Source of the DNA: Lytechinus pictus
Taxonomy: Eukaryota
Length of the DNA: 64,000 bases
Direction: 5' to 3'
Assembly: GCF_037042905.1 (NCBI RefSeq)
Contig: NC_087245.1
Span: forward strand, 38,006,001-38,070,000
Below, piece by piece: positions 30,871 to 57,802 of the stretch. Made by a program: the position numbers and the translations under genes. A model generated the notes under the pieces. That model saw only the letters and a list, made by a program, of their open reading frames with translations, did not search any database and had not been told where the DNA came from. Position 1 is the stretch's first letter; the number at the start of each line of letters is the position of its first letter.

Positions 30871-31198
30871 TCTCCATTACATATTAAACATTTTCAAGGG
30901 AAGTGGATTTGGTTTGGAATGACTGGTGATATTTATTAACTGGAATTGGAACAGAGCTTCTTATTGCGTACCACCTATTGATAATTGTGTCATGTTTTGT
31001 AATAGTAAAATCAACTACGGTATAAATTGTAACTAAAGTAATGACGTAGTAGAGACAAGCACTAATTCTATGTACATGTATCATGTGAACACTTCCCTTA
31101 ATCTTGATTGTATACTGTGTGAACACAGCCTCTACTATAACAACAGACATTCCCCTCTCTTGGATACAAGATGTTAATGTCAATGCATCCCTTGTATT

Positions 31199-32330
31199 CC
31201 CAGAAGGAAAAACCAGTTCCACTGGACCATTTAGACCAGTAGAATTTTAACTGGTAACTCTGGAAATTGGTTTACTGGTCTAACTGGTCATACTGGTCCA
31301 GTTAAAATTTTACCGGTCCAGTTAAAAATTAAACTGGTCTTGAATTACTGGAATTTTATACTGGTCTTATTTCTGGTCTCACTGGTCTTCATACTGCTAT
31401 CCAATTCAAGCTGGCCTTTACTGGTATTTTCTACTGGTCTGATTGGTCCTCGAACTGGTCCTCGTACTGGCCTTAACTGGATCAATTTATTACATGCATG
31501 TGGTTTGTTATATACCATGTTCAGTGAAATGTGATAGAAAAGATGGTTAGTAAATTAATCTTTCAGCTGTTATTTTAAATGTGATGAAATTACACATTTT
31601 CATTGTGAATTAGTTCACACACTCATTTGGAAATTTTTTAAACAACAATGAGTGCCATTGCAAGGATATTCCATTCTATATCCTGATTTTTCTTTTTAAA
31701 ATAGGATATGCAAATGAGGTAAACCACGTGATCAGCATCATCAGAATTACTGGTATTACTGGTCTTGACCAGTTCAATTTCAAACAATGAATTACTTTAG
31801 ACCTAGTTGACTATATCAGAGGAATATATCTTGCTTTGATCTTAATCATAATTAAAGGAAATAATTATTTTAATGATAATGTTAATACTTGATAATCATG
31901 ATAATATCAATAATAATAATTACAATATCAATATCAATGATAACAGTAATAAGAATGATAACAACAATGATCATAATAATCATAATAATAATAATCATGA
32001 TAATTATAAGAAGAATGATGATAACAATAATAATGATAATAACTTTCTCTAAATTGCAAGATTCATTTTCCATAATTCGTCAAATGATCTGACTTGAAAT
32101 AAAGTCATTATTTTGGACCAGTAACACCAGTTTGATGAAAAACAATTTAACTGGTATTACTAATTGCTTCAACTGGAATGCATTTGTTTGAACTGGTCTC
32201 CAGTTGATTTTTAATTTACTGGTCCAGTTAAAAATCAACTGGTCCAGTAAAAATATACTGGAAACCAGTAAAATTCTACTGGAAACCAGTAAAAAGTTTT
32301 ACTGGTCTTATACTGGTTTTTCCTTCTGGG
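31199..32330. mobile_element. Non-autonomous EnSpm/CMC-like DNA transposon inserted 6 bp inside the outer 5' LTR
   Basis: Perfect 19-bp TIR CCCAGAAGGAAAAACCAGT, 2-bp TSD TT, dense subterminal ACTGGT/ACCAGT repeats and an internal (ATA/ATC)n tract at 31860-32041. Confidence 0.8.
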
Positions 32331-32712
32331 TTATGTTAGCTTTAAGCTGCTGCAATGGGCAATTTATAGGGCTCTATTATAACATCATGCCTTGCTCACC
32401 CATGCTTGGCAGTAACTCCTAGTAAGGCATAGGGTATAAATAGGAGACAGTTTTTAGTTAGGTTAGTTGTTATGAGTTGTTATTGAGTGTGCATGGATCC
32501 ACCGCTGAAAGCGTACCAGCCTGAGGAAGCACCATACCCCGGCAGCTACACTACAGCTAGGACCCAGAGCGCTCTGCAACGACCTCTTCGACTTCATCTT
32601 CCTGAGCATTCCAGGCCTTCATCGACTTCGAGATCCATATCTTAAGGTTAGATTTATAGCGCATAAGTTATCATAGTTTACAGTCTAAGTTTATAGGCCA
32701 CGATACAATAAA

Positions 32713-32726: not shown

Positions 32727-33137
32727 TTAGAATTTGTTAGGGGAGGGAAAGGTAAAGGAATGTAGTTTAATGATAGGTACAGTAGTTTAAGGACGTTCCA
32801 CAGTTATGTTTGTGCGCATTATGATCTGCGCATATTTTACACTCTGCGCGCTGACGTCACAATGGATGAACAGGCGATTAATTAGCTGTGGTTATGAGCT
32901 GATTTTTCTCATCATCTGCATGCTAACTACAGATCCGATGCGTTATTTTATGAAGCTAAAAAACTGGAATTATTCCATGGACCATTTTTAAAAATATGTC
33001 TACAATTTTGACATACTTTACTCTGCAATGCTGCCAAGAATCACGAATATGACCCCGAGTTTGAATAAATGGTAGAGTGGTTTTGTTTTTTGTCTTCACA
33101 TAGATACAAAGCATTTGGCACATTTTTGGTGTTTTAG

Positions 33138-34164
33138 AAAGCACATTTTCTCTAATAAAAATACTGATAGTTTGAAAACAAGCACATGAACCCCTATTTT
33201 TTAATGTTTGCACCTCTTATGTATACCTTCCTCTACAACTTTGCAAATTTTGGTGAAAATGACATGGATTTTGAATAAAGTGCAGCATTTTTTGTACTTT
33301 TGTAGTTTGTTATTGAAATTTCACATTTTTGAGATTGGGTTTTTGTTATCTCTTACGCCATTTTTAAGAACTGACAGTGCTGTTAGACTTAAAATTGCAA
33401 ACAAATAGTACTATAAATAGATTCTCCATTCTAACAATACAATGATTAACTCTCTTGCAAAATTTGATGACTTTTTCATGTATTTTGACTGAGTAATATA
33501 GGTTTAAACTCAATGGCCCGTATTCTGATAGCAGGTTTAATTTAACCCTAGTCTAAAGTTAACCCTGGTTTAACTAAACCTCCTCTAAACCTCACCTCTG
33601 GTCTAAGTGTAGTTTAATTATTTTGGTATTCTGATAGCCGGGTTTAACTAAAGCACATTTTCTCTAATAAAAATACTGATAGTTTGAAAACAAGCACATG
33701 AACCCCTATTTTTTAATGTTTGCACCTCTTATGTATACCTTCCTCTACAACTTTGCAAATTTTGGTGAAAATGACATGGATTTTGAATAAAGTGCAGCAT
33801 TTTTTGTACTTTTGTAGTTTGTTATTGAAATTTCACATTTTTGAGATTGGGTTTTTGTTATCTCTTACGCCATTTTTAAGAACTGACAGTGCTGTTAGAC
33901 TTAAAATTGCAAACAAATAGTACTATAAATAGATTCTCCATTCTAACAATACAATGATTAACTCTCTTGCAAAATTTGATGACTTTTTCATGTATTTTGA
34001 CTGAGTAATATAGGTTTAAACTCAATGGCCCGTATTCTGATAGCAGGTTTAATTTAACCCTAGTCTAAAGTTAACCCTGGTTTAACTAAACCTCCTCTAA
34101 ACCTCACCTCTGGTCTAAGTGTAGTTTAATTATTTTGGTATTCTGATAGCCGGGTTTAACTAAA
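33138..34164. repeat. Exact 512-bp tandem duplication
   Basis: Identical ORF-track peptides at 33208 and 33720 (offset 512); the sequence appears identical on reading. Confidence 0.92.
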
Positions 34165-37100
34165 CCTGGGTTAAACCCGGGTTTAAAATTCTTTTTGGAA
34201 ATAATAACCCTCTTTTAACCAAGACTAGCACCTTTTTGGTAAATTACTGCTGCAGAGTGCAGGGATGATTGCAACAAAGTTGAAAAAAATGTTATTAAAG
34301 TTGTTTTTTCTTAAAAATTGGGATTTTATGGAAACTAATGACAACTATTGTAGTGAAAAAAAGCATTCATCACCCATATATGGTAAGAAATTTTCATTAA
34401 ATTTTTCTTTATTTTTGTTAATTACTAAAACATTTCAACCCCAAACCGAGTGACTTGCACAGTTTTTTGTGTATCAGTCCCATTCATTGCTTTTCATGTT
34501 TGTCAAAATCTAAATTGAATAGATTCCCCTCAACCATACTCTACTCTCTAGACTAGAGTCTAGACTCTAGTCCTAGATCTAAAACAATAAGTTAAGAGGT
34601 CGACGTCTTTATTCTAACTTTAAGTAAGGGAATTATTTTTAACTTTTGAGAGAAGTCTTGGGTCTAACATTAGGCCTATAGGCCTAGTTAGATCTAGCCT
34701 AGGCCCAATTGTTTGGAGGAGAATTGAACATTGTTTTGAGTTTGACAGTTACTTTACTGAAGCAAAACGTGTCTACGATACGTAGTCTAGTGAGTTAGTG
34801 GAGCAACCGAGACTGAACTGAAGATAAATATTGGTCTAGGCCTAGAACAAAATTCAGGACTTGTCTTAGGCTGGCTTGCATGTAGCTTAGGGACAGGGAT
34901 AGATATAGATTATTATTCTAACCTTAAGTGTAACAAAGTTAGTGGAATACGAATAGATCTGATTTGTCTTAGAGTTAGACTTAGACAAAAAGCTTTGAAC
35001 AGTCTCTGGGTCTGGGACAGGGATAGATATAGATTATTCTAACCTTAGATCTAGTGGAATAGATCTGATACTCTTAGACAAAAAGCTTTGAACAGTCTCT
35101 GTATTGGTTGTTCGCTGAACTATGACAGTCTATGTTGGCCTCTCTCACCAAGGCAATGTGATACGACAGTAAAATGTCAGAATTTTTAAAATAAATCCCC
35201 AGAAACAACGGTTATTCCTGTCTGCACTCTGCAGTGTTAGATCTGACTATCGCTGCATTGCTTGCCAAGTAACTAGGCCTGGCTAAATTTAGAATTAGTC
35301 CTAGACATCTATCTACTCCTGTTTTAGGTCCATATCTGTTTCTTTGAAGAGTTTTTTATTTAAACATTTTTTTGGGACTCGTTTAGGTTTCCAGATCCAG
35401 GACTAGAAAACAGGCCTAAACCTAGACCAACAGCTCATTCTTGACTAGACTAGGCCTGGCCTAGATTTATGTGAGAATTTAGATCTTGGCCTAACGTTTG
35501 TCTGTGCTATCTATTCTTTCTAGATTCTATTTCTAGCCTAGCCGGTAGCCCTAACATTAGGACTGGCTGATCTAGTCTACTGTATGATCTAGAATGTCTA
35601 ACGCTGGCCTAGATCTAGTTGACTAAATAACTTAGACTAAAAGTTAGACCCTATCTAGACCTAGAACTAGATCTATATCAGTCTAGGTCTACATGTAATA
35701 GGTCTAGATCTAGAGGTTTGTAGACTCTCAACATGCTCAATGTAGATTCTAAAAATAAAAAAAGTAAATGTAGGCTAGTCTACAGTAGATCTACTCATCT
35801 AACTTTAGGCCTTTAAAGGAAGTAGGCTACAGATCTGTTGGATTATTTCTATTACTAGATCTAAAAAGGATCTAAATCTAGGCCTAGATCTAAAGCTAGG
35901 GACTGTAGTTCGAGATCTAGAGGTCTAGCACTCCCTTAAAATAGTACTAAGCCTACAGCTACATGTACTATGTAGTTCTCTGTGTAGCCAAACAACAGTT
36001 AGCATTGTCGTAATCTTATTTTGGTGTGTGTGGTTACCATACAAACACATATTTTGATGAATGAGAAAATGTGCCTTGCAGATTATTTTACCTCAAGTCA
36101 AAACCTAGTGTTCTAAATTTCATGAGCATAGGCCTATGTCACAAAATGAAGAAGTAGTTCAATCCATTAGATGTGATTACACATTTATTGATTTAATATG
36201 CTGTCACCATGGCAACACAGTTTCCAACACATGTATACAAATATATGTCTTGCAGATCTATACCTCAAAACCAATGTGTGAGCCAACTTTTATAAGAATT
36301 GGTTGAAAACTAATGAAGGAGTTCAGATTTTCACCTAATTTCATTATGTAATATGTTGTTACCATGGCAACATGATTTCTGATACATACAAAAATATGTC
36401 TTGCACATCTTCAACTCAAGACTAATTTGTGTGCCAAATTTTATGAGCATTGGTTGAAAAAAGATGAAGGAGTTCGAACTACCAAATTTTCACCTCATTT
36501 TTGTTATTTAATATGTTGTTACCATGGCAACACGATTTCTGATACAGACAAAAATATATCTTAAACATCTTCACCTCAACATTAATGTATGTGCCAAATT
36601 TTTAAGGGAATTGACCACTTGGAAACTGATTAAATAGGTCAAATCACTAGATTTTCATCTAACTTTGATATTTGATTTGTTACCATGGCAACATGATTTT
36701 TTTTATAAATTCATAAAATATATTTTGCACATCTTCACATCAAGACTAATGTTTGTGCCACATTTCATGAGAATTGGTTAAAACTGGGGAAGTAGTTGGA
36801 ATTACAAGTTTTTTCCATAATTTTTGCCATAATATACCGTTACCATGGCAACACAATTTCTGACACATGCAAAAATGTGTCTTGCAAATTTTCACATAAA
36901 GACTTATGTCTGAGCCAAATATCATGAGAAATGGTTTAAAAATTCTAAAGTAATAAAAACCACAAGTTTTTCACCTAATTTTCGATATTTAATATGTTGT
37001 TACCATGGCAACGCAATTATATACTTAAGGCATAGAATATGTTTTGCACATCTTCACAATAAGACTAATGTATGTGCTAAATTTCATGAGAATTGGTTAA

Positions 37101-37662
37101 AAACTGAGGAAGTAGTTGGAACATCAAGATTTATGCGTAGCTTTTGCCATAATATTCCGTTACCATGGCAACACAATTTCCGACACATTAAAAAATGTGT
37201 CTTGCACATCTTTACCTCAAAACCAATGTGTGAGCCAACTTTCTTGAGAATTGGTAGAAAACTGATGAAAGTATTTTAAACGGCAAAATTTTAGCCATAA
37301 TATACTGTTGCCATGGCAACACAATCTCTAAAAAAGGGGATTTTTTTTTTACACCTCCTTACCTTGAGAACAATGTGTGTTCCAAATTTCATGAAAATCG
37401 GTTAAAAACTGAGAAAGTAGCTTGTAATGCAATATAGGCATAAATTCTAAAAAATTGTTGGCCATGATTTGTTGGATTTAAACCAGGCTTAAACTACCCC
37501 CTGCGCGAGTTTAACTTTTTGAGGATTTATTACCACACTTAGACCAGGGTTAACTTAAACCTTGCTATCGGAATACGAAACTTAAACCTAGGTTTAAATA
37601 TGGCAGTTTATTACCACACTTAGACCAGGGTTAAGTTAAACCACGCTATCAGAATACGGGCC
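33515..37662. mobile_element. ISL2EU/Harbinger-group non-autonomous element nested in the Kolobok element (left end duplicated at 33515 and 34027)
   Basis: TIR GGCCCGTATTCTGATAGC / GCTATCAGAATACGGGCC flanked by AT on both sides; subterminal GGTTTAA/TTAAACC repeats. Confidence 0.72.
36040..37430. repeat. ~160-bp tandem repeat array, each unit carrying GTTACCATGGCAAC
   Basis: Motif at 36203, 36358, 36518, 36679, 36839, 36999, 37159 and 37307. Confidence 0.9.
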
Positions 37663-38574
37663 ATTGTAGTGATATTGCGAGGTCTAAAAATGCCAAATTC
37701 TTTTGAATGCGCAATTCTTAAGAACATCCATTTAGGTGAACTTTGAAGCTCTATAGCAAAAAATCAAGCACATGGACCTATGTTAATTTTTGCATATTTC
37801 GAATATTCAGGTTCTAAAGTATCTATGTGCAAAGTTTGGTGAAAATGACATGGATTTCACTTTAACTGTGGAACGTCCTTAAGTGATAGGAATTCCCCAT
37901 TAGTAGGTAGCCACACCCAAATCCACCATCTTGGTTCCATAGGGTTGTGTGTTATAATATTTTGACAAGTACAGTACTTTAGTGATAGGAACTTTCCATT
38001 AGGGACACATGTAGCCACGCCCAAATAAGCCATCTTGTTTTCATAGGCTGTGTGTATAGTGGTATTTTTCCATTCCTTACAAATCTTTCCATGGTTCATT
38101 TCAGCTTATGTTTTTGAACCCTTTACCATAATTTTTTGTTATAGGTTCTTTTTCGATTTTGTTAGTCATTTTCATTATTGTACTCAAACTTTTGAAGTAA
38201 CTTTTGAAGCCGATTTCTTGGCTCTCTTATGAATGACTTGGTCTCCAATGCTCTACTTAACCATACACTGACACATTCTGTTATATATTGAGGTTCAGTC
38301 TTCAGATTTTCTTGGCTCTTTACCAGGTTTTCTTTGTAGAATACTTAAAACTGAGAAATAAACTGTAATTGTTAGGAATGAAGATGATATTAGTGTTAGC
38401 CAATTTAATTGTCAGTGACTTGAAGTTAAGGATGAGTATGTTCTTCGACTTGAATCTACTGGAGCTTGGGAAGTGAGTAGATCCAAGTTGACGAATTAGG
38501 CATCAATTGTTAGTTGCTTGCTACTTTTGCTAGGATACTTTTTACTTTGACCTGAATCTTCTCGAGCTTGGGAG

Positions 38575-38858
38575 GTCGAATAGATCCAAGTTGATTGATT
38601 AACTAGAGTATGATAAAGTTATCGTAGTTTAAGATGATAAGGTAGTCTAAGCTTAATCAAACCTCCACTTAGTCGAATAGATCCAAGTTGATTGATTAAC
38701 TAGAGTATGATAAAGTTATCGTAGTTTAAGATGATAAGGTAGTCTAAGCTTAATCAAACCTCCACTTAGTCGAATAGATCCAAGTTGATTGATTAACTAG
38801 AGTATAATAAAGTTATCGTAGTTTAAGATAATAAGGTAGTCTAAGCTTAATCAAACCT
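38575..38858. repeat. 97-bp tandem repeat, about 3 copies, in the retroelement leader
   Basis: Units begin GTCGAATAGATCCAAG at 38575, 38672 and 38769. Confidence 0.92.
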
Positions 38859-39263
38859 TACCTTCCACCCATTATAAAGTTGAATGAATTTGAATTCAGC
38901 AATTGAAATAAGAATTTAAGATTACAATCTTAGGTAACTAATTTGTTGAAAGTATCAGAACAATAATTTATATTTTTTATGTAGATTTTAGATTAATTTC
39001 CCATATTTCTGTTAAAATTATTTGTTCAGCATCTGGACAAAGTTTTAGATCATAATTTTATATTTTGTGTGAGGATTGACTTGTATATATCTAGAACTAC
39101 ATGTATATGCAACAAATTTTAGGAATCCTTGTTCTGATTGTTGGCCTGACATTTGTCCAACAATTGCACTCATAAGTCTGAATAGGGAAGACATTTATTT
39201 TTATTCAAACTGAAATAAAGGTTGAGCAGTTTTCTTAGATTTCTGATCAATGCCGTCAAGAGT

Positions 39264-40112
39264 ATGGCAACTCCCAGGAAGATAAAATTCATAAAAATCA
39301 ATTTTTGTGGCTCTGAGGATCTTCTTGCCGTGTGTAGTCGGCGCTCGGCACAAAAAATATTGAATTGGAGGGAGCGATGGGGTGACTTGGATAGGCATAC
39401 ATTTTTGCATTGCCCTGGTCTTTCTCGAGCAGCCGATTTAGTTCACTGTTTTGATTTTGAATTTGCAGGGTACAAGCCTCTTGTTTATAGAGGGAATTCC
39501 AACTGGAAAGTTTTTATTAGTAGGTTTGAGAAATATGTCGACAAGGCTGGCTTAACTGCACAGGAGAGTACAGATGCACTCTTATTGTGTCTTGAGGACC
39601 AAGCCGCAGAATATTTCCTCAGCCTGAAGAAGGATGCTGGAATTACCAGCTATCACAGCATACTATATTGGATGCAATACCGTTTTAAGAATACATTATT
39701 TTCGGGTAGGGGTAGTGGTAGGACTCAATATTCCAGAACGCCGCTTCGTAGTCCCATCATGACGGCTTCTGGCCCAGGGTCCAGTAGTAGTACTTCCCCT
39801 ACACACACTAAGTCCAAGAATTGCCCTCCTATCAATAGAGTCAACACTATTGTGAGGCAGTTGCAACAGTCTGTGAGGGAGTCGCAACAGTCTGTGAGGG
39901 AGCTGCAACAGTCACAGAAGGAGATGCAACAATCACACAAGATAATCGTTGAGAAATTTGAGACACAAAAGAACGATATAGAAAAACTGCGCTTCTTAGT
40001 AGAAGGTCTTGCAAAAGAAGTAAGGAAGTTAACTTGCCAGCAAGATTCGGAAAACGCAGAGGGATCGGGGAACGAGGCCAAGCTCCGATCCAAAAAGAAA
40101 ATGGCCATTTAA
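39264..40112 (+). CDS. Gag-like protein, 282 aa: N-terminal HhH-like domain, capsid NTD, S/R-rich linker, coiled coil
   Basis: ATG in good context (agtATGG). IKINFCGSEDLL..SAQKILNWRERWG..HCPGLS resembles the ComEA HhH pattern. YRGNSNWKVFISRFEKY..LLLCLEDQAAEYF..YRF is a Gypsy capsid N-terminal pattern. Heptads VRQLQQS/VRESQQS/VRELQQS follow. Confidence 0.8.
   Translation: MATPRKIKFIKINFCGSEDLLAVCSRRSAQKILNWRERWGDLDRHTFLHCPGLSRAADLVHCFDFEFAGYKPLVYRGNSNWKVFISRFEKYVDKAGLTAQESTDALLLCLEDQAAEYFLSLKKDAGITSYHSILYWMQYRFKNTLFSGRGSGRTQYSRTPLRSPIMTASGPGSSSSTSPTHTKSKNCPPINRVNTIVRQLQQSVRESQQSVRELQQSQKEMQQSHKIIVEKFETQKNDIEKLRFLVEGLAKEVRKLTCQQDSENAEGSGNEAKLRSKKKMAI
40049..40106 (+). promoter_or_regulatory. 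-1 programmed ribosomal frameshift signal (slippery heptamer plus H-type pseudoknot)
   Basis: G GAA AAC in gag phase (40049-40055), then a 6-nt spacer. Stem 1 is GGATCGGGG (40062-70) with CTCCGATCC (40083-91). Stem 2 is GGCCA (40076-80) with TGGCC (40102-06). Loop 3 is A-rich, AAAAAGAAAA. Confidence 0.8.
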
Positions 40113-40693
40113 ATAATTGTACAAAGGAATCTAGGTTTCTAGCTAATGTACATGTAAATAATGTGAATGTATCTGATCTTTCGGCTTGTAATCCTGATAG
40201 TCTTGATAACTCTGATCTTGATTTTGCCGAACATGATCCGTGTGTTCAGAAGAGTTTGGATCTGCACGAGGAGGTCGCGAACAGTTTGGTGAGCAGTGGT
40301 CCCCCATGTTATAACCCTTTTTCAGTTTGCAATATTAAGTTTAGGTCGATTGTGGACACTGCTGCTAGCCTGGCTGACTCGTGGCCTGAACCAGACTCTC
40401 AGTCCGCCGGTGTCTGGCGAACTACATGTACTGCGGCCTCGATGGCTACTGAGCCGTCTAGAACAGAGTGGTGCGAGATGAAGGGAGATCCCGTCCCTTC
40501 ATCTATCAAAGGGTTAGGTCTCTCATCATCTTTCCCCAATAGGTTAGTCCCAATATGGCCCCCCCGAATTGTATTTGACCGTGGTAAAATTTATGATATC
40601 CAACAGGTAGTACTAGTTAGGAGTTATCTCTCATCCTTAGCTATTAATAGTTTTCCTGCTATTTTTCCATGTTGGCGGATGAAGGAGATGTAA
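40055..40693 (+). CDS. -1 frame ORF (pol remnant) with a truncated aspartic protease motif
   Basis: Open for ~212 codons in the -1 frame of gag. It contains FRSIVDTAAS (retropepsin D-T-A) and VFDRGK, but no RT, RNase H or integrase motifs. Confidence 0.6.
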   Translation, partial: RRGIGERGQAPIQKENGHLNNCTKESRFLANVHVNNVNVSDLSACNPDSLDNSDLDFAEHDPCVQKSLDLHEEVANSLVSSGPPCYNPFSVCNIKFRSIVDTAASLADSWPEPDSQSAGVWRTTCTAASMATEPSRTEWCEMKGDPVPSSIKGLGLSSSFPNRLVPIWPPRIVFDRGKIYDIQQVVLVRSYLSSLAINSFPAIFPCWRMKEM

Positions 40694-41599
40694 GATAAAG
40701 CCAACATTGTCTGGCTGGCCAGTTCTATGTGGCTTCAGACTCCTAACTTACCCCATACCATGGAGTACCTCAGTTATAACTCCGAATTCAGTGTGATCTA
40801 AGCTAATAGATAGGGAATGTAGGTCACATTGATATTTCTATAATTGGTCCTAAATAATACTTGTCAACAATTTTAGTATAACAACTATTAATAGATAAAT
40901 TTATATTCATAGTCAGTGATATTTGATCATTGCTGATCATAATTAATATTTTTCAGGTTCTGAATTAATAACTAAATTCATTCATAGCGATTAAATATAG
41001 GAATAATTGATAGGTGGCAAACTACATTAAGTTTACTTTAGGAACTAAAATAGTTGCCAAGCTAAATGTGTACTTTAACTTTACAATGTAATCATCACAA
41101 CTACAAGGTTAGGGATGGTATTTATACCAAAACTTTAAGGATATGAATAAGACTCGAGTATGATTTGTAGGTACATCATGTAGGAATTCGCATTTTTTAA
41201 CAATGTTTCACTTGTCAAACTTCATCTGTGAATAATACTAAAAAATTAAACTTTGAATTGTGACCTGTTTAATGAACGATTGATTTACTTAAAACAAAAA
41301 GTGTTACCGATTGTTGTTACCACCTATAACTAAGTTAATTCATGAACAAATTTAGGGAATAACCATAGTGGCAGACCCGAGACATCGCTTCTTATGGATG
41401 GTGTTAAACAGACTTGTCTGAAATACTATTCCCCATATAATACAAATCCAAAACTCCAAGTTTATAGGGCTGTTAGGCATTTGGGAAGGCAGTCATCTAC
41501 CTGTAAGCCTTCAATTCTTGGATGGTACCTGAAAAGTTCAATCATGCCCTTTAAAAAACCTCTTTGCCGAGAAGTCTTGGCTGGAAATAAATTAAACTT

Positions 41600-44500
41600 T
41601 GTCACGAATTCGTAAGTTCTGACACGTTGTTGCAATGAACTACAAGGAAGGCGTCTGTGAACTATATGCTCCCATTTATTAGATTATGTCTAATAACATT
41701 GTAGTGTTCAGTTATTCAACAACTGTGTGAGATTCCTGTAAATAAACAATAAAGGATAAACATATCTTAGTAAAGAAAGCATTTCTGTACATGTATCATC
41801 ATTCTTTCCCAAAATATTCATTAAGACATAAGGAATAATCAATCATGCCCTTTAACCATTTTGCTGTCAAAGGTAGAATTTAACTGAAAGTAATAAGAGA
41901 GAATTAATGAAACTTTCCTAATTCAGTCTTAATATCATTGTTTCCCAATTCCAACAAATCTACCCTATATGATAAGATATCATAATTATCTAGCAACAAA
42001 CATCTGTGAAAAATATATTTGTCTTCAAAATAACAAGGTATAGATTTAATCAGTTAAATCTCTAAAACTGTAACAGAAAATTCCTATTGTTTTGTTTCCC
42101 TTCTGAATCAATAAAATTCACTTGAAAAACAATTATCAATATTAGTGGTGATTGAATTATTATTTCACGAATTTTGTGTAAGCAATGTAATTTTAAAGAC
42201 ATCAGTTCTAAGTAACAAGAATTAACTGTAAGACAACATTAACTATCACTACTGAAAGATAAACAATAACGTCATGAAACCCTGCTATAACACGTGTAAA
42301 CTCCGGGCGGCGGATCACACCAAAATTCCTGGAAATATCAATCCGCGAGCCAACTCGCACGTAAGTTTGTGACCATACCACATCAAATGAGTAGGAAAAA
42401 TAGTGCATAACTAAACTGGCTTGTAAATATGTTAAACAACAATAAATCCTATAAGCTTGGATTTAAGAAAATACTCTAAATTCGTAGAGTCATAATCATG
42501 AGTACATCTTAAGAATTGCGTGTCACAAGACAACATTTTGAAGATATCGACCGCAGAGAACTTATGCGTGTATTCAAGATACGCAAGGTCCTTCGTTGGA
42601 AAGTGTGATGGATTTTCAAAGTATAATCTAAACCTAAATCTCTTCAACAAGGTATTTAAAAGAGGAATACAAAGATATTAATAAACTACACATTCTCATT
42701 AAATCTACAAAAGTTTTTGAGCAAATCTCAACATACCTTGCATAGCATAAAGCGTGAAAACTAAGGAAATCTTGTGATCAATTGAATGAAGCAAACTGCT
42801 GTGATTTTACGAACTCGATCGTGTTGTTCTAACTAGTCTACGTACAAGGACACGCGCAAGCGCACAATTTAAAAATACACATATACTTCAACATGTCATG
42901 ACATCCCATCCCCCCAAAGGTGACGGAATGTCACTGAATACACATACATTGTAAACATAACAATACTGAAAATATCACTGGTGGTTGTTCATATAAAAAT
43001 GAACAAAACAGTTAATAGAAGTCCAGAGTTCAAGGTTCGAAATTCAACACTTAGATTTCGATGAAAAACGTCCAAAGTTTGATGTTGATGCACTCAAGTT
43101 CGAAGTTAGATATACTAAGAGTCTGGTGAAAATATCCCAAGGTGAAAATATCTCAAGGTGAAAATTTGGCAGAGTTCGGTGTCACCCAACTACTAAAGCC
43201 TAAAACGTTAATCTATGAACGTTCAGATTCCTTCATAAGCAGAACAAGCTTTGTCACAGGTCTTTTCAGTTTTGTACCGTCTGCGAATCTCACGTCCACT
43301 ACTCTGACGAGGTCATCTTTTCCTGGGTAGACACACGTGACTTCCGCCATCTTCCAGGAGCCGCGCTTCAGGTTCTCACCGATGACGAGTACGATGTCCC
43401 TCTCTCCTAAGTTCTCAGCAGATTTCTGCCACTTCTGGCGTGGTGAGAGTTTGTGGATGCACTCCATCCAACGTCGCCAAAACCCATCTACCATGAAATT
43501 GCAGATCTCCCTACGTTTCCGGTGGTTTCCTTTGTATTCTTCACACGGGACTTCGGGGCATGGCAAGTCACCTCTACCTATCAGGAAGTGGTTTGGCGTT
43601 AGTGGAGGATGATCCAGGGGTGACGATGATTTTGCAGTTAGGGGTCGACCATTGATCAGGCTGGATATCTGGCAGAAAACAGTCTCCCACTCGACGAAAG
43701 TCAAACGATCAGCTTTCACCAGGTGTCTCATACCTTTCTTAACTTCTTGGACCAATCGTTCAACGGCCCCCTGGTGGTGAGGTCCTCCTGGAGGTCCGAA
43801 TTTCCACTGAACATTGTACCGTTGGCAATGGTCCTTCAGTACTGTCTGATTCAGTTTCAAGTTCAGTTCATTGATGGTGTTATCAGCTCCTCTGAAGGCA
43901 GTGCCATTATCGCTGACCAGCAAGGATGGCGCCCCTCTGATGCTTATGAACCTTTCTAGTGCCTGTAGGAACGCTTGTGTAGACAGGTCTTGAACACAGG
44001 TGAGGTGCACGGCTCTGGTCACTGCACACGTGAACACAGCACAGTAGCCCTTTGTCGTGGTATTCCGGTTCAGCTTTACATTCACTGGTCCAAGGTAATC
44101 AACCAATGTAGTCTTGAATGGGGGTGAGCAAGGAGTGACTCGGAATTCTGGCAAGTCAGCCATCTTCTGTTGAATTGGCTTGCCTCTGTGTCTCCTGCAT
44201 ACGACACAGTCGTACACCACGCGTTTGGATATGTTCACGTCTCCGACAATCCAGTAACGCTTCCTAACTTCTGTTGCCGTTCTCAAGTGACCCCCGTGAA
44301 GGGCATGTGCATGTCTATCTCTCACGATCAGCAGACTGATGTGGCTCTTCTTAGGGAGAAGATAAGGATGTCGCACATCATATGACAATGGAGCCCTGTC
44401 AATTCGTCCGCCAACACGGAAGACTTGGTCTTCTTCATCGAAGAATGGGTCCAGTTTCATGATGTTAGGATCCTGGAAGTCAACATCTCGCTGTGCTTGT

Positions 44501-47500
44501 CTTAACCAGTATAATTCAGCCTCCTTGACAAGTTTTGGAGAAGGGTACATAGAGATCTGTTTTGCGAGCTGCTTCAGCCATTGGTTCTTGGGCAGTTTTT
44601 TCACGGAGAGAACTCTAGCGGTCACCATCTTTAACCTGCACCAGCTGGAGAACTTGGTTGAGTCAACTATCGGAGAAGGCTTAGAGACGACGTTGATTCT
44701 GAGAGCCAGTGTCTTGGCATTCCGGACATGGAATTTTTTCTGTTCTTCGTCTCCAAGGCTCACAGGAACATTTTCTGGTGTCTTTGGCCAAAACGTAGGT
44801 GATTGCTTCAAGTACACTGGTCCCTCAATGACTCGTCTCATTTCATTGGCAGTTCCTCCTCTGGAAACCAGATCGATAACATTCTGATCTGATGGTACAT
44901 ATGCAATGTCCTTGATGGGGTCGAACTCTGTTGTGATCTCGCCAACACGATATGCGACGTAGGACCGGAAGGACTTGGATTGACCTCTTACCCAGCTAAT
45001 GGCAGTCATGCTGTCTGTCCAGATCTTGGAATAGGCGATGTTGAGCCGCAAGGCTTTCTTCACAGTAAGCATGAGCCTCGACAACAGAAGGATCGCCTGA
45101 AGTTCCTTTCGAGGAATGCTAGACTGCTTCAGTGGAGTGAGTTTGGCTTTTGCACATACAAATGATAGATGTGCTTCAGTGTCCTCAGGGTGAGACCATC
45201 GTAGCCAAACACCAATACCCATGGCATCTTCTGAAGCATCGCTCGCTCCGTGCAGGGACACTTCTGGTAAAGGCCTTATCCCCTTGAAAGGCTCTGGGAT
45301 CAAGCACCTTGGAATCTCAATGCTAGCTACCTCCTCCAAGTCTCTATTGATGTCTCGTAGAATGGCACAAAGTTCACCCTTGTCGTTGAGAGGGGTATCC
45401 CAGTCTAGGTTTAGCTGCCATAGCTTTTGTAGGAGAATCTTCGGTCTAACGAGGAGCCCAGATAACATGCCAAACACATCGTAATACGAAGCAGTTTGGG
45501 CCAGGATATTGCGCTTGGTAGGAACAAGTAGAGTCGACTTCACCTCCTTTACCCTCAACGTGTCTTTTGAGAGGTTCCATTTAGTGCCCAGGGCAGTAGC
45601 ATCTGTGCTGTCTTCTGTTTCGTCGCAGGCTTCTGTCGCATTCGATTGCCATTTTCTGATGGTGAAGTTGCCTTTCTGAAGAGTCTTGCTAAGCTTAGAT
45701 TTGAGCTCTAGAGCCTCTGGGACATTAGTGACAGATTCATTGAGGTCATCAACGTAGAACTGCCTGGCAACCACTTCCTTGAGTTTGTCGTCTTCCGGTG
45801 CATGTTCATCTACCACATGTCTAAGGGTGACTATAGCGGCAGTTGGTGAGGGCTTGTCCCCAAAGGTGACAGTTGTCAGTTCGTAGACTTGAATTGGGTG
45901 GCTAGAATTCTCTCGAAACACAAACCTGTGGAATCGAGCATCATCAGATTTGATTTTTATGGCTTGATACATCTTGCTGACGTCTGCAATGATGCCCACC
46001 TCGTTCTCCCTGAACCTCAGGGCAACTTCAAAGAGATCAGAGTTGATATTCTCACCTTTCATGAGGTAGTCATTCAATGAGTGGCCCTGGAACCTGGCCT
46101 TCGCGTCATATACCACTCTGACAGGAGTTGTCTTCGAGTCCTTGGTGACAGCGAAATGTGGCAGGAACCACATCTTTTTTCCAGTGCTTCTGTCTCGCTG
46201 TAGCTCCTCTTCTGAGACATGGCGCGAAACACCCCTCTTTAACTGGTCTCTCATCTGTCTACAGTAGATGTCCCAATCTTCATGCCTGTTTTTGAACTGA
46301 TTCTCAAGGCTTCTCAACCTTTTGACAGCATAGTTGTAGTTGTCCGGCAGGTCATCGGGTGACTTCCTCCATGGCAGTCTGACTTCGTACGATCCATCAG
46401 AAAGCTGAGTTACGCTCCGTTGCATTGCCTCAGTTGCTTCTTTGTCCAATACATCTGAGGAGCACTTACACTTCTTGGGTTCCAGACCCACAGTCTCCAG
46501 ACCTATGAACTCTTCCAATGGTCCAATGGCTGACACATTGATGTAGTTCAGCAGTGAAGTTGAACTTGTAGACCGTCCTCCTTGAACAAACCAGCCAAAG
46601 GGGCATCTTACAGCGACAGGATCATCAAACTTTTCGCCAAGGATGTATTCTTCCCAGATCATCAAGTGTGTGTTGTCCACACCAAGGAGTACGTCGATGG
46701 TTTCGGATGGGGCAGCATGGATATCAATGGCGCTCAGATGCTCATACTGCCGAAGCTGTTCTGGTAGTACAATAGGAGTATCACCGCAGGGTTGATTTAT
46801 CTCTGTCATGGTTAAAGGACATGACCAATTCCCTGCAATATCTTCAATGTAGCAGTCCAACAGTCTCAATTTCCTTGTTATCTTGCTGCCACCAACAAGA
46901 CTCAGATCATGGTCCTGGAAAAGGCCTCTCTCTGTCCTTGGAAGAATCCCTTCCCTTAACAGTGTAGCTTGGCTACCACCATCCAACAGGATGCGCACCA
47001 GGTGCCGGACATCGCCACATCGTAGATAACCAACAACAGTAGGTAAAGTGCTTTGAAGCTTCCCTGTCTCGTTGGTGTGGGCTGTTGTCACGTTGATTGA
47101 GGTTGAACGTGGAGATTCCATAGTGTTGCGTGTTTGGTTTGCAGGACCTTGACCACTCTCTCCGTATATGACAGGGCAGACAGCTGCGAAGTGTGAGTCA
47201 CTGCCACACGTTTGGACTCTGCATGGAGCAACAAACTGACAAGAGTTTTGGTCATGTGGAGGCTTGCCAGCAACACAGTTGTTATGCCCACATCGGTAAC
47301 AGATACCATTCTTTCTCATTACTTTATATTTCTCATTCTGTGGCAGGCTCTTGAACTTGTTGCAGGTCTTCAAGTAGTGCGAGTCTGCATTGGGGTGGAT
47401 GGCACACTTGGCGACCCCGGAGTGTCTGGCCTTGCTTGGTTGGCTCTGGTTATCAGAAGTATATGAAGCAGCACTTGTAGACTTATACACCTTATGTTGT

Positions 47501-49831
47501 CTTTGCGGAGGGCTAGGCGAATTGTCCCCACTGTTAGGCTTCGCCTTCTCGAGCAGCAAAAGTTGGCTGTATAACCACTTGACCAGACCGGTGAGGGAAT
47601 CATCAATCCTGTCATCTCTAACACCTTTATAATATGCGATGCGGTGTTCCTCTGGGAGCTTCTGCTTAATCTGACTCAACATGATCTTACTGTTAAGCTC
47701 TCCAGATAGGCCAATGGTCTCAGCTTGGGTTTCGAAGTTTTGAAGAGTCTGGACAAAATGACCCATGGCGGGGAGGTTTGTTTTGCCTTTGATCTCGTAT
47801 GTCCTCAGGTTCTCTAGATCTTTTAGTAGGCTGTCTACTACTTTGTCCTGATCGCCCTAACACTCATCAAGTACCTGCCAGGCTCGTTCAACACTAATGC
47901 ACCCTTTGATTTTGTTGCGTTCTTTGACATTAATCATTGATTCGGTCAGTTGATGGAAGCATTCCATCTCTGTTAACTCTGTTGCACAGTGGGTGAACAA
48001 TTCTTTGAAACGCTTGTAGTCTCGAAGGTTCCCATTGAAAGTTGGGAATCTCATTCTTGCCATTCTTGGAGCAGCCGACGTAGCGGTGTGGGGCATAGGA
48101 GATGGCGCATATGAAGCTGGACTGGATCTTGGATGTGGAATTGTAGGTGAAGAGGGGAGAAACTGTTGATTGTCCAGGGGAGATTGAGACTGACGGTCGA
48201 CGACCCTCCTTCCCCGTATTAACACCTGGACGTACTCATTTTCACATTCTCCCATCCATTTCTCCTCCACCTCATACTCTCTCTGATCTTCGATGATATC
48301 CATCAGCGCCGAATGTTTCTCTTCCACTTTCTCAAATTGTTGCTCAGCTTTAGTGATGTATTTCTTTAACATGTCTAGATCACCAACGGCATCTGTTGTA
48401 AGGCTGTCAATTGTCGATAATGTTCGCGTCAACTGACCCTTGATGTTTCGTCTTGATAGCTTCAACTTGTTGACGTCAGCCATGATGTAAGTTGAAGCAG
48501 GTTGATATACACTATAGTTGTTGAAGATGTCACGAATTCGTAAGTTCTGACACGTTGTTGCAATGAACTACAAGGAAGGCGTCTGTGAACTATATGCTCC
48601 CATTTATTAGATTATGTCTAATAACATTGTAGTGTTCAGTTATTCAACAACTGTGTGAGATTCCTGTAAATAAACAATAAAGGATAAACATATCTTAGTA
48701 AAGAAAGCATTTCTGTACATGTATCATCATTCTTTCCCAAAATATTCATTAAGACATAAGGAATAATCAATCATGCCCTTTAACCATTTTGCTGTCAAAG
48801 GTAGAATTTAACTGAAAGTAATAAGAGAGAATTAATGAAACTTTCCTAATTCAGTCTTAATATCATTGTTTCCCAATTCCAACAAATCTACCCTATATGA
48901 TAAGATATCATAATTATCTAGCAACAAACATCTGTGAAAAATATATTTGTCTTCAAAATAACAAGGTATAGATTTAATCAGTTAAATCTCTAAAACTGTA
49001 ACAGAAAATTCCTATTGTTTTGTTTCCCTTCTGAATCAATAAAATTCACTTGAAAAACAATTATCAATATTAGTGGTGATTGAATTATTATTTCACGAAT
49101 TTTGTGTAAGCAATGTAATTTTAAAGACATCAGTTCTAAGTAACAAGAATTAACTGTAAGACAACATTAACTATCACTACTGAAAGATAAACAATAACGT
49201 CATGAAACCCTGCTATAACACGTGTAAACTCCGGGCGGCGGATCACACCAAAATTCCTGGAAATATCAATCCGCGAGCCAACTCGCACGTAAGTTTGTGA
49301 CCATACCACATCAAATGAGTAGGAAAAATAGTGCATAACTAAACTGGCTTGTAAATATGTTAAACAACAATAAATCCTATAAGCTTGGATTTAAGAAAAT
49401 ACTCTAAATTCGTAGAGTCATAATCATGAGTACATCTTAAGAATTGCGTGTCACAAGACAACATTTTGAAGATATCGACCGCAGAGAACTTATGCGTGTA
49501 TTCAAGATACGCAAGGTCCTTCGTTGGAAAGTGTGATGGATTTTCAAAGTATAATCTAAACCTAAATCTCTTCAACAAGGTATTTAAAAGAGGAATACAA
49601 AGATATTAATAAACTACACATTCTCATTAAATCTACAAAAGTTTTTGAGCAAATCTCAACATACCTTGCATAGCATAAAGCGTGAAAACTAAGGAAATCT
49701 TGTGATCAATTGAATGAAGCAAACTGCTGTGATTTTACGAACTCGATCGTGTTGTTCTAACTAGTCTACGTACAAGGACACGCGCAAGCGCACAATTTAA
49801 AAATACACATATACTTCAACATGTCATGACA
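41600..49831 (-). mobile_element. BEL/Pao LTR retrotransposon, full length, very young
   Basis: 1304-bp LTRs at 41600-42903 and 48528-49831 appear identical (TGTCA..TGACA). TSD AACTT (5 bp). PPT GGGGGATGGGA on the minus strand next to 42904. Confidence 0.96.
43213..48483 (-). pseudogene. BEL/Pao gag-pol polyprotein interrupted by one in-frame TAG (47857-47859)
   Basis: ORFs 48483-47857 and 47766-43213 share a frame with an open linker (VLDEC*GDQDKVV). Three Cys/His knuckles, protease LLDGGSQ, RT FYVDD, RNase H DASED, integrase HHCC and VDYLGP..SDNG..ER. Confidence 0.9.
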
Positions 49832-56392: not shown

Positions 56393-56423
<31 letters not shown>

Positions 56424-56894: not shown

Positions 56895-57349
56895 CTATCC
56901 ACCCATCCTTTTGATGATCATGCCATTGCCGTGATTTGTGGCTCTAGGTATATCATTCATTCAACCTTCTTGTTTTCTAAGATTGCTCAACTGCTTAACC
57001 TGTATGAATGCTTCTCATGATAACCAAATTCTGAAATTCTAATAATCAAAGTTTCAACACATTCAAGAACCTCTGTAGGTTTAGTAACAATATAGGCTAC
57101 CCGTATATAGACAGAAAATAACAGATAATTATGTTTTGGATTGTCCATTCTGATCTAGTTTAAGAAAGACATTGTATTACAATGTCAAATCATGTACACT
57201 CGTAGTTGTACCGATGTAGTTGTAGTGAAATATTCTATTCTCTATACATGCATGATAACTTCACAATGATGTACCCAGTATCATATTTAATATACCATAG
57301 GTTCCTTGTAGCTTAAACTATGACTGTTATAAGTGCATGTATTGTTTCC

Positions 57350-57500
57350 NNNNNNNNNNNNNNNNNNNNNNNNNNNNNNNNNNNNNNNNNNNNNNNNNNN
57401 NNNNNNNNNNNNNNNNNNNNNNNNNNNNNNNNNNNNNNNNNNNNNNNNNNNNNNNNNNNNNNNNNNNNNNNNNNNNNNNNNNNNNNNNNNNNNNNNNNNN
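57350..57500. other. Assembly gap
   Basis: Run of N. Confidence 1.
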
Positions 57501-57802
57501 AAAATACAAAAGTAAAGAAAAGAATTCAAATGAAAAGAAGAAAAAAATAAACGAGAGAACAAAAGAAAATGTAGAAAAAAAATAAATGGATGATGTATGT
57601 AACACATGTACTGTAAAGGAATATTTTAATTTTATCTTGATAATTGCATTTAAGTAAGATTAGTTTGTTAGGTTAAATGTTAAAGTTTGAGTGGAGGTTA
57701 GGGTTAGTATTATGTTAGCTTTAAGCTGCTGCATTGGGCAATTTATAGGGATCTATTATAATATCATGCCTTGCTTACTGATGCTTGGTAATGACATAGC
57801 AG

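What the first reader, a model, noticed from the sequence alone, without database searches (positions are those of the whole stretch)
39264..40693. Pol-less LTR element keeps an intact -1 frameshift pseudoknot that fuses Gag to a non-enzymatic ~210-aa ORF
Seen: slippery G GAA AAC in gag phase, a 6-nt spacer, a 9-bp stem 1, a 5-bp stem 2 and an A-rich loop 3, followed by a stop-free -1 frame to 40693. That frame has only the first strands and D-T-A motif of a retropepsin plus VFDRGK; no RT, RNase H or integrase is visible. Known: this is the canonical gag-pol recoding architecture. Inference: both frames and the signal are intact even though the LTRs have diverged and at least five elements inserted elsewhere in the scaffold. 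The element may therefore be a TR-GAG-like parasite, or a domesticated locus making a fixed-ratio Gag/Gag-ORF2 pair with a new function.
Basis: partly seen in the sequence, partly recalled or inferred. Interest (0 to 1): 0.8.

Follow-up and report, generated by a model that had tools for sequence, protein, structure and literature searches.

The report
Dead gag-only retrotransposon keeps frameshift signal
This is an old, broken copy of a small family of pol-less Ty3/gypsy retrotransposons that still carries its ancestors' conserved -1 frameshift pseudoknot; the frame behind it is a leftover stub of pol, not a new gene.

Summary
ORF1 runs 39264-40112. G_GAA_AAC sits in gag phase at 40049-40055, followed by a 6-nt spacer, a 9-bp stem 1, a 5-bp stem 2 and an A-rich loop 3. 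The -1 frame is open to 40693.

The signal is real and inherited. Autonomous Ty3/gypsy relatives in the same genome carry it in the same phase. A second family (F2) has C_CCA_AAC with the same pseudoknot, and 4 of 9 stem-1 pairs differ on both sides yet still pair.

The "new function" reading does not hold.
- ORF2 is the N-terminus of pol, cut just after the protease D-T-A motif.
- ORF1 is itself a reduced Gag, lacking the capsid C-terminal half and the CCHC knuckle.
- The three other copies end ORF2 at a TAG (window 40604-40606). A change private to this copy opens the frame to 40693.
- ORF2 evolves neutrally (dN/dS 0.7-2.9).
- The other copies have broken ORF1.
- This copy is split by five insertions and has lost the stretch holding the polypurine tract (PPT).
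- Three RNA-seq runs gave essentially no reads.

It is not a one-off deletion: the same deleted structure lies at 3-4 separate loci.

The scan noted another gag-pol pseudoknot elsewhere in this genome (s1-327754).

The parts
31049..32710 (+). 5' LTR of the element. It is split by a 1.1-kb foreign insertion at 31199-32330.
   Evidence: It matches both LTRs of the uninterrupted copies on C19 and C3. LTR relatives are listed.
32792..37878 (.). Nested insertion 2 (5.1 kb), between the LTR/PBS region and the leader. It has 13-bp terminal inverted repeats and a TTAA(G) target duplication, and it contains a ~160-bp satellite array.
   Evidence: It is absent from the C19 and C3 copies. The junction sequences are and the repeats.
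37879..39263 (+). 5' leader of the element, with three 97-bp tandem repeats at 38575-38865.
   Evidence: Collinear with the C19, C3 and C15 copies.
39264..40112 (+). ORF1: a reduced Gag of 282 aa. It keeps the N-terminal domain, the start of the capsid-like domain and a coiled coil of LQQS repeats. It lacks the capsid C-terminal half and the CCHC knuckle.
   Evidence: ORF. tblastn to the 522-aa gag of the autonomous C17 element covers aa 8-64, 153-225 and 379-515. The alignment is.
40049..40055 (+). Slippery heptamer G_GAA_AAC in gag phase.
   Evidence: Seen directly. It is identical and in the same phase in C17, C3b, C28, C29, C19, C3a and C15. Family F2 has C_CCA_AAC at the same place.
40062..40091 (+). 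Stem 1 (40062-40070 paired with 40083-40091, 9 bp) enclosing a 12-nt loop.
   Evidence: Fold. In the 14-sequence comparison 95% of cells pair and 4 of 9 pairs are changed on both sides.
40076..40106 (+). Stem 2 of the H-type pseudoknot (GGCCA 40076-40080 paired with TGGCC 40102-40106) and the A-rich loop 3 (40092-40101).
   Evidence: Both GGCC tetramers are invariant in 14 of 14 sequences, 10-11 nt after stem 1. The helix is extended differently in different lineages: 5 bp here and 7 bp in C17.
40055..40693 (+). -1 frame after the slip, 212 codons in this copy. It is a pol N-terminal stub: the pre-protease spacer, the first part of the protease with D-T-A at 40355-40363, a deletion of the rest of the protease, and VFDRGK at 40571-40588.
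   Evidence: tblastn to C17 pol covers aa 9-116 and 260-281. The alignment is. There is no Pfam hit and no relative in the representative library.
40604..40606 (+). Position of the family's ORF2 stop. It reads TAG in the C19, C3 and C15 copies and CAG only here, which extends the frame to 40693.
   Evidence: Codon alignment of the four copies.
40694..41595 (+). Internal non-coding region, part a.
   Evidence: Collinear with the other copies. It has no pol or ORF3 similarity.
41596..49829 (-). Nested insertion 3: a BEL/Pao LTR retrotransposon with an open 1517-aa ORF (43213-47766).
   Evidence: Absent from the other copies. Pfam finds Peptidase_A17, RVT_1, rve and DUF5641.
49830..51430 (+). Internal non-coding region, part b.
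51431..56894 (+). Nested insertion 4 (5.5 kb): an unrelated gypsy-like fragment with RT, RNase H and integrase similarity.
   Evidence: Absent from the other copies. tblastn to C17 pol gives 27-33% identity at 53235-55337.
56895..57699 (+). Internal region, part c, containing an N run at 57350-57500. The ~195 bp that in the other copies hold the polypurine tract and the first ~150 bp of the 3' LTR are missing after 57699.
57704..58696 (+). 3' LTR, truncated at its 5' end and split by a 0.6-kb insertion at 57804-58391.
   Evidence: Identity to the 5' LTR is 96.6% over 292 bp and 92.4% over 79 bp.

Best explanation
The window holds one old, dead copy of a low-copy, non-autonomous Ty3/gypsy family. 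The uninterrupted element is 7.5 kb and here spans 31049-58696.

Shown: the family's ancestor was a gag-(-1 frameshift)-pol element of a clade still present in the genome (gag ~520 aa; pol ~1420 aa with protease, RT, RNase H, integrase and a PHD finger). Internal deletions removed the capsid C-terminal half and the zinc knuckle of gag. They also removed everything in pol beyond the first part of the protease, apart from a short segment that includes VFDRGK. The gag-pol junction was spared, so the clade's recoding signal survives: G_GAA_AAC, a 6-nt spacer and an H-type pseudoknot.

Inferred: if this RNA were translated, a fraction of ribosomes would slip at GAA_AAC and make a 476-aa fusion, 264 aa of Gag plus 212 aa of pol stub. 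That fusion would be a by-product, not an adapted protein. The deleted element was copied to at least 3-4 loci, which must have used enzymes supplied in trans, perhaps with its own reduced Gag contributing.

Shown: this copy later took five nested insertions, lost the stretch that in the other copies holds its polypurine tract together with the start of its 3' LTR, and has drifted at about the neutral rate. Its two frames are most likely still open by chance.
For: Structure and copies:
- blastn against the copies on C19, C3 and C15 defines the element and its five insertions.
- The flanks differ between loci, so these are separate insertions.

Ancestry:
- ORF1 and ORF2 match the gag and the pol N-terminus of the autonomous elements on C17 and C3.
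- The LTRs are 73% identical to the C17 LTRs.

Signal:
- It is present in the same phase in every clade member.
- Stem 1 covaries and GGCC/GGCC is invariant.
- G_GAA_AAC has been proposed as a -1 slip site in toti-like dsRNA viruses (PMC3832450, PMC4881467).

No constraint on ORF2:
- dN/dS is 0.7-2.9, and 1 of 11, 1 of 6 and 6 of 24 changes are synonymous.
- All six substitutions private to this copy in ORF2 are non-synonymous or remove the stop.
- The family stop lies at 40604-40606.

Decay:
- LTR identity is 96.6% and 92.4% here, against 98.5% and 99.25% in the C19 and C3 copies.
- About 27 private substitutions in 1356 aligned sites (2.0%) fit the LTR-based expectation of about 1.75%. Simulation gives roughly 0.25 for no stop arising.

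No expression or gene model:
- Depth is zero over 38008-41549 except for a few reads that carry the letters of other copies.
- No protein relatives were found.
Against: - This is the oldest of the three similar copies, yet it is the only one with both frames open. That is mildly unexpected.
- Private substitutions inside ORF1 plus ORF2 proper (11 in 1077 sites, 1.0%) lie at the low edge of the LTR-based neutral expectation.
- ORF1 shows an excess of synonymous change between lineages (P about 0.02; 0.003 against C15), so Gag was probably functional in the active family.
- A second family, F2, keeps a non-enzymatic -1 ORF open in 12 of 15 copies, and all six indels between its subfamilies are multiples of three. 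A useful Gag-X fusion is therefore not absurd in this clade.
- RNA sampling was shallow: about 6% of each of three runs, from unknown tissues.
Confidence: 0.85

Rival explanations
1. Semi-autonomous parasite. While the family was active, both the reduced Gag and the Gag-ORF2 transframe protein were needed in a ratio fixed by frameshifting, for example to enter particles built by an autonomous partner. The window copy is then a recently inactivated member that still encodes both.
For: - The same deleted architecture was propagated to 3-4 loci.
- ORF1 dN/dS is 0.3-0.5.
- ORF2 up to the family stop is open in all three similar copies.
- The sister family F2 keeps a 288-336-codon -1 ORF open in 12 of 15 copies, with only in-frame indels.
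- The frameshift signal has stayed intact.
Against: - ORF2 changes are almost all non-synonymous, in the master lineage as well as after insertion.
- ORF2 being open in three copies is a single inherited state, not three independent observations.
- The older C15 copy has frameshifts and stops in ORF2 and has lost the 3' arm of stem 1.
- The protease is truncated and Gag lacks its nucleic-acid-binding knuckle.
Confidence: 0.1
2. Domesticated host gene. The locus has been co-opted, like PEG10, and makes Gag and Gag-ORF2 for a cellular function.
For: Both frames and the signal are intact although the copy is old. PEG10 shows that a gypsy-derived gene can keep -1 frameshifting (PMC2800197, PMC5009743).
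Against: - No RNA reads from this copy.
- Substitution is neutral and the stop loss is private to this copy.
- The LTRs are still present and the 5' LTR is now 6.5 kb away behind two insertions.
- No protein in the public collections resembles either ORF at this length.
- Paralogous copies are decaying.
Confidence: 0.03
3. One-off artefact. This copy alone suffered an internal deletion of an autonomous element, or the structure is an assembly error.
For: The region is heavily nested and has two N runs.
Against: The same gag and pol deletions and the same 3.3-kb non-coding tail occur at C19, C3 and, in an older form, C15, each with different flanks. Contigs from an independent run carry the family sequence.
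Confidence: 0.02

Closest known systems
Non-autonomous LTR retrotransposons that keep only GAG/PROT remnants (the TR-GAG / LARD continuum, described mainly in plants; PMC13570524)
   Same: It has LTRs, a gag-derived ORF and a protease remnant, but no RT, RNase H or integrase. Several copies share the same deleted structure, and no close autonomous partner is in the genome.
   Different: It is an animal element of 7.5 kb with a 3.3-kb non-coding tail. Its gag is itself reduced (no CCHC, partial capsid domain). The remnant is reached through a retained -1 frameshift signal rather than sitting in one frame.
Retroviral and Ty3/gypsy gag-pol -1 frameshift signals with an H-type pseudoknot, such as MMTV gag-pro and SRV-1 (reviewed in PMC5009743). 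The MMTV pro-pol site G_GAU_UUA is recalled from my own knowledge.
   Same: A heptamer in gag phase, a 6-nt spacer, a 9-bp G+C-rich stem 1, a short stem 2, an A-rich loop 3 long enough to cross stem 1, and a -1 frame that overlaps the gag tail.
   Different: The heptamer G_GAA_AAC is non-canonical at the P-site (GAA onto GGA). No Rfam family matches. No frameshifting has been measured.
G_GAA_AAC slip sites proposed for toti-like dsRNA viruses (PMC3832450, PMC4881467)
   Same: The identical heptamer, placed shortly before the ORF1 stop, with a -1 ORF2.
   Different: Those are RNA viruses whose ORF2 is an RdRp. They are unrelated in sequence, and the site is only predicted there as well.
PEG10, a domesticated Ty3/gypsy gene that makes RF1 and RF1/2 by -1 frameshifting (PMC2800197, PMC11299033)
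   Same: A gypsy-derived Gag plus a Gag-protease-region fusion made through a heptamer and a pseudoknot, with no RT or integrase.
   Different: PEG10 is single-copy, expressed, conserved and has an intact protease. The locus here is one of several decaying copies, its protease is truncated, its evolution is neutral and no RNA was detected.

Membership tests
Ty3/gypsy LTR retrotransposon (derivative) | Flanking direct LTRs | tested here: met
   The 5' and 3' LTRs were identified through the uninterrupted copies. LTR pairs are 98.5-99.25% identical in C19 and C3, and 92-97% identical here.
Ty3/gypsy LTR retrotransposon (derivative) | gag and pol homologous to elements with the order PR-RT-RH-IN | tested here: met
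   ORF1 and ORF2 match the gag and pol N-terminus of the C17 element. Its pol carries Asp_protease, RVT_1, RT_RNaseH, Integrase_H2C2 and rve in that order.
Autonomous LTR retrotransposon | Own RT, RNase H and integrase | tested here: not met
   tblastn with C17 pol and ORF3 finds nothing beyond pol aa 281 in any family copy. No ORF of 120 aa or more lies in the 3.3-kb tail.
TR-GAG | A complete GAG ORF as the only coding capacity | tested here: not met
   Compared with the 511-522-aa relatives, ORF1 lacks the capsid C-terminal half and the CCHC knuckle. There is no Pfam gag hit. A pol stub is also present.
TR-GAG | Several copies with the same non-autonomous structure | tested here: met
   Copies lie on C1, C19, C3 and C15, plus solo or partial LTRs.
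TR-GAG | Size within the spectrum proposed for the class | tested here: inconclusive
   The element is 7.5 kb. PMC13570524 notes that GAG/PROT-retaining families often exceed the proposed size range, so size is a weak criterion.
Programmed -1 ribosomal frameshift signal | Slippery heptamer X_XXY_YYZ in the zero frame | tested here: inconclusive
   G_GAA_AAC is in phase. The A-site slip AAC to AAA is canonical, but the P-site slip GAA to GGA has a G:U at the middle position. The sister family F2 has the canonical C_CCA_AAC at the same place.
Programmed -1 ribosomal frameshift signal | Stimulatory structure 5-9 nt downstream | tested here: met
   There is a 6-nt spacer and a 9-bp stem. Stem 1 covaries and the stem-2 tetramers are invariant.
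Programmed -1 ribosomal frameshift signal | Measured frameshifting, or a detected transframe product | not testable with these tools
   This needs a reporter assay, Ribo-seq or proteomics.
Domesticated gag-derived gene (PEG10-like) | Purifying selection on the coding sequence | tested here: not met
   ORF2 dN/dS is 0.7-2.9. The substitution rate private to this copy is about neutral.
Domesticated gag-derived gene (PEG10-like) | Expression of the locus | tested here: not met
   Subsamples of three RNA-seq runs give no reads specific to this copy over 38008-41549. Depth was limited.
Domesticated gag-derived gene (PEG10-like) | Orthologous single-copy locus in related species | not testable with these tools
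   No relatives of this genome are available to the tools.

The most novel reading that the evidence does not exclude
In this animal genome a clade of gypsy-derived, pol-less elements (the window's family and the commoner F2 family) may form a class of semi-autonomous parasites. They would use the clade's conserved -1 frameshift pseudoknot to make a knuckle-less Gag and a Gag-X fusion with a non-enzymatic tail in a fixed ratio. The window copy would be a decayed example of that strategy, not merely a deletion relic.
Probability: 0.15. Interest if true: 0.55.

Novelty: new member of a known kind. Interest (0 to 1): 0.3.

Why it matters
For this locus, little. It should be annotated as a nested, dead, non-autonomous Ty3/gypsy copy and not as a gene.

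The comparison gives two useful by-products:
- A recoding element for an animal gypsy clade that is supported by covariation and matches no Rfam family. It shows G_GAA_AAC and C_CCA_AAC as interchangeable slip sites in front of one pseudoknot.
- A lead that pol-less relatives, especially F2, may keep a frameshift-dependent non-enzymatic ORF. That lead is testable and bears on how non-autonomous LTR elements exploit their partners.

Tried and rejected
- Pfam on ORF1 and ORF2 gave only sub-threshold coiled-coil noise.
- Rfam on 37879-41595 gave no frameshift family, only chance sub-threshold hits.
- Searching ORF1 against 5.8 billion proteins found nothing. Searching ORF2 against 1.84 billion representatives also found nothing.
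- Thermodynamics alone did not help: the signal region folds no better than shuffles, so I relied on comparison.
- TSDs of the family copies: a possible 4-bp CTTC for C19, but no clear duplication for the window or C3 copies. Left unresolved.
- I tried to fetch further elements with related LTRs (C2 50.07 Mb, C19 2.22 Mb, C9, C27) to look for a closer autonomous partner and for the ends of F2.
- dN/dS in the two wrong frames of ORF2, run as a control, gave low values in the gag phase (0.16-0.35). That phase has 7-9 stops there and the counts are small, so I treat this as noise.
All comparisons are between natural copies.
Full report
**1. What is there**

The sequence and ORF list show ORF1 from ATG 39264 to TAA 40110-40112 (282 aa). 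A second frame is open from 40034 to 40693. Codon starts are congruent to 0 and 2 modulo 3 respectively, so the second frame is -1 relative to ORF1.
- GGAAAAC lies at 40049-40055, with GAA and AAC as gag-frame codons.
- A 6-nt spacer follows, then a 9-bp stem: 40062-40070 paired with 40083-40091, with one G-U.
- ViennaRNA finds the stem (centroid -14.5 kcal/mol). The 86-nt segment folds no better than shuffled sequence (z = -0.30).
- GGCCA in the stem-1 loop (40076-40080) can pair with TGGCC at 40102-40106, across a 10-nt loop with 9 A.
- This gives an H-type geometry: L1 5 nt, S2 5 bp, L2 2 nt, L3 10 nt.

Whether it means anything had to come from comparison.

**2. The element**

DNA searches of the window's own 812-Mb genome found three more copies: C19 (92%), C3 (92%) and C15 (84%). 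Aligning the window to them shows one element spread over 31049-58696.

It is interrupted by five insertions:
- 31199-32330;
- 32792-37878, a TIR element with a TTAA(G) duplication;
- 41596-49829, a BEL/Pao element;
- 51431-56894, an unrelated gypsy fragment;
- 57804-58391.

The uninterrupted C19 copy is 7.5 kb. It consists of a ~0.54-kb LTR, a 1.4-kb leader with 97-bp repeats, ORF1, ORF2, a 3.3-kb tail and the second LTR. The tail has no ORF of 120 aa or more and no similarity to pol.

The flanks differ between loci, so these are separate insertions and the deleted structure is not a one-off. LTR searches add a handful of solo or partial LTRs. The family is small.

**3. Ancestry**

Protein searches of the genome led to autonomous relatives on C17 and C3.
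- Their gag is 522 or 511 aa and carries Retrotrans_gag and a CCHC knuckle.
- Their pol is 1426 or 1421 aa with protease, RT, RNase H, integrase and a C-terminal PHD finger.
- Their LTRs are 73% identical to the window's LTR.

The window's ORF1 aligns to gag aa 8-64, 153-225 and 379-515. It has lost a disordered spacer, most of the capsid-like domain and the zinc knuckle. The older C15 copy still has the knuckle.

ORF2 aligns to pol aa 9-116 and 260-281.
- It keeps the pre-protease spacer and the start of the protease, including the clade's D-T-A-A active-site motif.
- It then skips the rest of the protease and keeps PIWxPRIVFDRGK.
- Nothing further of pol remains.

"Non-enzymatic" is therefore right, but the ORF is a relic stub, not a novel protein. 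It has no Pfam hit and no relative among 1.84 billion representative proteins.

**4. The frameshift signal is real and inherited**

The motif GGAAAAC-N6-GGATCGGRGARCGAGGCC occurs 9 times in the genome, against 0 for the reversed control. The sites are the four family copies, the autonomous C17 and C3 elements, two relatives of the latter, and one degenerate copy. It is always in the same gag phase and always has the -1 frame open behind it.

Among these, stem 1 changes only in ways that keep pairing: G-U, A-U or G-C at one position, G-C or G-U at another, and U-A or U-G at a third. Stem 2 is extended differently in different lineages: GGCCA/TGGCC here and CGAGGCC/GGCCTCG in C17.

A covariance model of the slip site plus stem 1 then found a second, commoner family, F2.
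- Its heptamer is the canonical C_CCA_AAC and the spacer is again 6 nt.
- Its stem 1 is GGGTTGAAG/CTTCAACCC.
- The loop keeps GAGGCC, and GGCC follows 11 nt after the stem.

On a sequence-only MAFFT alignment of 14 distinct sequences:
- stem 1 is 95% paired and 4 of 9 pairs are changed on both sides;
- both GGCC tetramers are invariant;
- sliding the partners drops pairing to 21-62%;
- no shuffle reaches the observed covariation score.

The caveat is that most double changes sit on the single branch between the two groups, so the shuffle count is not a probability.

G_GAA_AAC is not a canonical X_XXY_YYZ. It has been proposed as a -1 site in toti-like viruses (PMC3832450, PMC4881467). From my own knowledge, the MMTV pro-pol site G_GAU_UUA has the same GGA P-site re-pairing. 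No Rfam family matches.

**5. Is ORF2 maintained?**

No.
- In all three other copies the -1 frame ends at a TAG corresponding to 40604-40606. Only the window copy has CAG there, which adds 29 codons.
- Pairwise dN/dS for ORF2 is 0.7-2.9, with 1 of 11, 1 of 6 and 6 of 24 changes synonymous.
- The six substitutions private to the window copy in ORF2 are five amino-acid changes and the stop loss.

ORF1 behaves differently. Its dN/dS is 0.27-0.55, with a synonymous excess at P about 0.02 (0.003 against C15). This suggests the reduced Gag mattered while the family was replicating. The counts are small and transition bias was not modelled.

The other copies are broken in ORF1. C19 has a 14-bp deletion, C3 a 536-bp insertion, and C15 many lesions plus loss of the 3' arm of stem 1.

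**6. Is the intactness of this copy remarkable?**

Its LTRs are 96.6% and 92.4% identical, against 98.5% (C19) and 99.25% (C3), so it is the oldest of the three. It carries about 27 private substitutions in 1356 aligned ORF sites (2.0%). That is close to the ~1.75% expected from the LTRs. Random substitution at that level leaves both frames open in about a quarter of simulations. Indels would lower this somewhat. This is unremarkable for one of four copies.

The copy cannot function as a transposon. Its 5' LTR is split and lies 6.5 kb from gag. The ~195 bp that hold the polypurine tract and the first ~150 bp of the 3' LTR are missing.

**7. Expression**

Three ribo-depleted RNA-seq runs of the same species were sampled at about 6% each, roughly 8 million reads per run. 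Depth was zero across 38008-41549 except for a few reads at 40164-40625. Where informative, those reads carry the letters of other copies (T at 40434, A at 40559). A contig from a fourth run also matches a non-window copy: T at 40604 and the 3-bp gap at 40611. The sampling is shallow and the tissues are unknown, but there is no support for expression.

**8. Context from F2 (outside the window)**

F2 copies have a 202-237-aa knuckle-less gag, the homologous signal, and a -1 ORF of 288-336 codons.
- That ORF has no Pfam hit and no similarity to pol beyond the first ~15 residues.
- Both ORFs are open in 12 of 15 copies.
- Between subfamilies, ORF2 differs at ~12% of sites and by six indels, all multiples of three. 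Simulation gives about 0.05 for no stop arising.
- ORF2 dN/dS is 0.6-0.8 and gag dN/dS is 0.3-0.56.

So in F2 the reading frame behind the frameshift does appear to be maintained. It does not rescue the window locus.

**9. Verdict**

This belongs to a known kind. Non-autonomous LTR retrotransposons that retain GAG/PROT remnants are described in PMC13570524. Gag-pol -1 frameshift signals are reviewed in PMC5009743, and PEG10 is the domesticated comparator (PMC2800197).

The scan has noted a gag-pol heptamer-plus-pseudoknot elsewhere in this genome (s1-327754). It has also noted the missing zinc knuckle of this Gag (s1-329258). I confirmed the latter.

Noticed in passing
L031, L033-L042 and L044-L047 (for example L044 = G000:C2:48952961-48956176; gag 1429-2127, slip 2082, -1 ORF 2085-3056): A second pol-less family, F2. 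It has a 202-237-aa knuckle-less gag, the canonical C_CCA_AAC heptamer and the homologous pseudoknot. Its -1 ORF is 288-336 codons, non-enzymatic and contains repeats. Both ORFs are open in 12 of 15 copies, and all indels between subfamilies are in-frame. The element's ends and class are unknown.
   Followed up: partly
G000:C17:4274056-4285201 (L052 + L057): An autonomous Ty3/gypsy relative whose integrase ends in a PHD finger. Between pol and the 3' LTR it carries a third ORF of 693 aa with a TatD_DNase domain (Pfam E = 3.9e-31). That ORF is absent from the related C3 element.
   Followed up: partly
window 32792-37878: A nested 5.1-kb element with 13-bp terminal inverted repeats and a TTAA(G) target duplication. 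It holds a ~160-bp satellite array (36184-37437). Its last ~180 bp (37700-37880) are very abundant in RNA-seq reads (depth 60-140), with many different downstream continuations, as a dispersed SINE-like repeat would be.
   Followed up: partly
window 43213-47766 (-): The nested BEL/Pao element has an uninterrupted 1517-aa gag-pol ORF with Peptidase_A17, RT and integrase. It is likely a young insertion.
   Followed up: partly
window 31198/32331 and 57699/57704: The insertion point in the 5' LTR and the truncation point of the 3' LTR both fall at about LTR position 150. I have no explanation for the coincidence.
   Followed up: no
window 40607-41150 compared with 37879-40606: Substitutions private to the window copy jump from about 1% upstream of 40606 to 6-9% downstream. 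Gag and ORF2 of F2 copies also show discordant similarity. This suggests mosaic (recombinant) subfamilies or a hypervariable tail.
   Followed up: partly
window 39264-39470, and many loci listed: The first ~66 residues of this Gag are conserved in the autonomous relatives. They also match ORFs of ~770-790 aa at more than 20 other loci, at ~44% identity. Another note (s1-329258) reads this domain as a helix-hairpin-helix. I did not test that.
   Followed up: no
window 38575-38865: Three 97-bp tandem repeats in the element's leader. Alignments to the other copies are gapped and inconsistent across this array.
   Followed up: no
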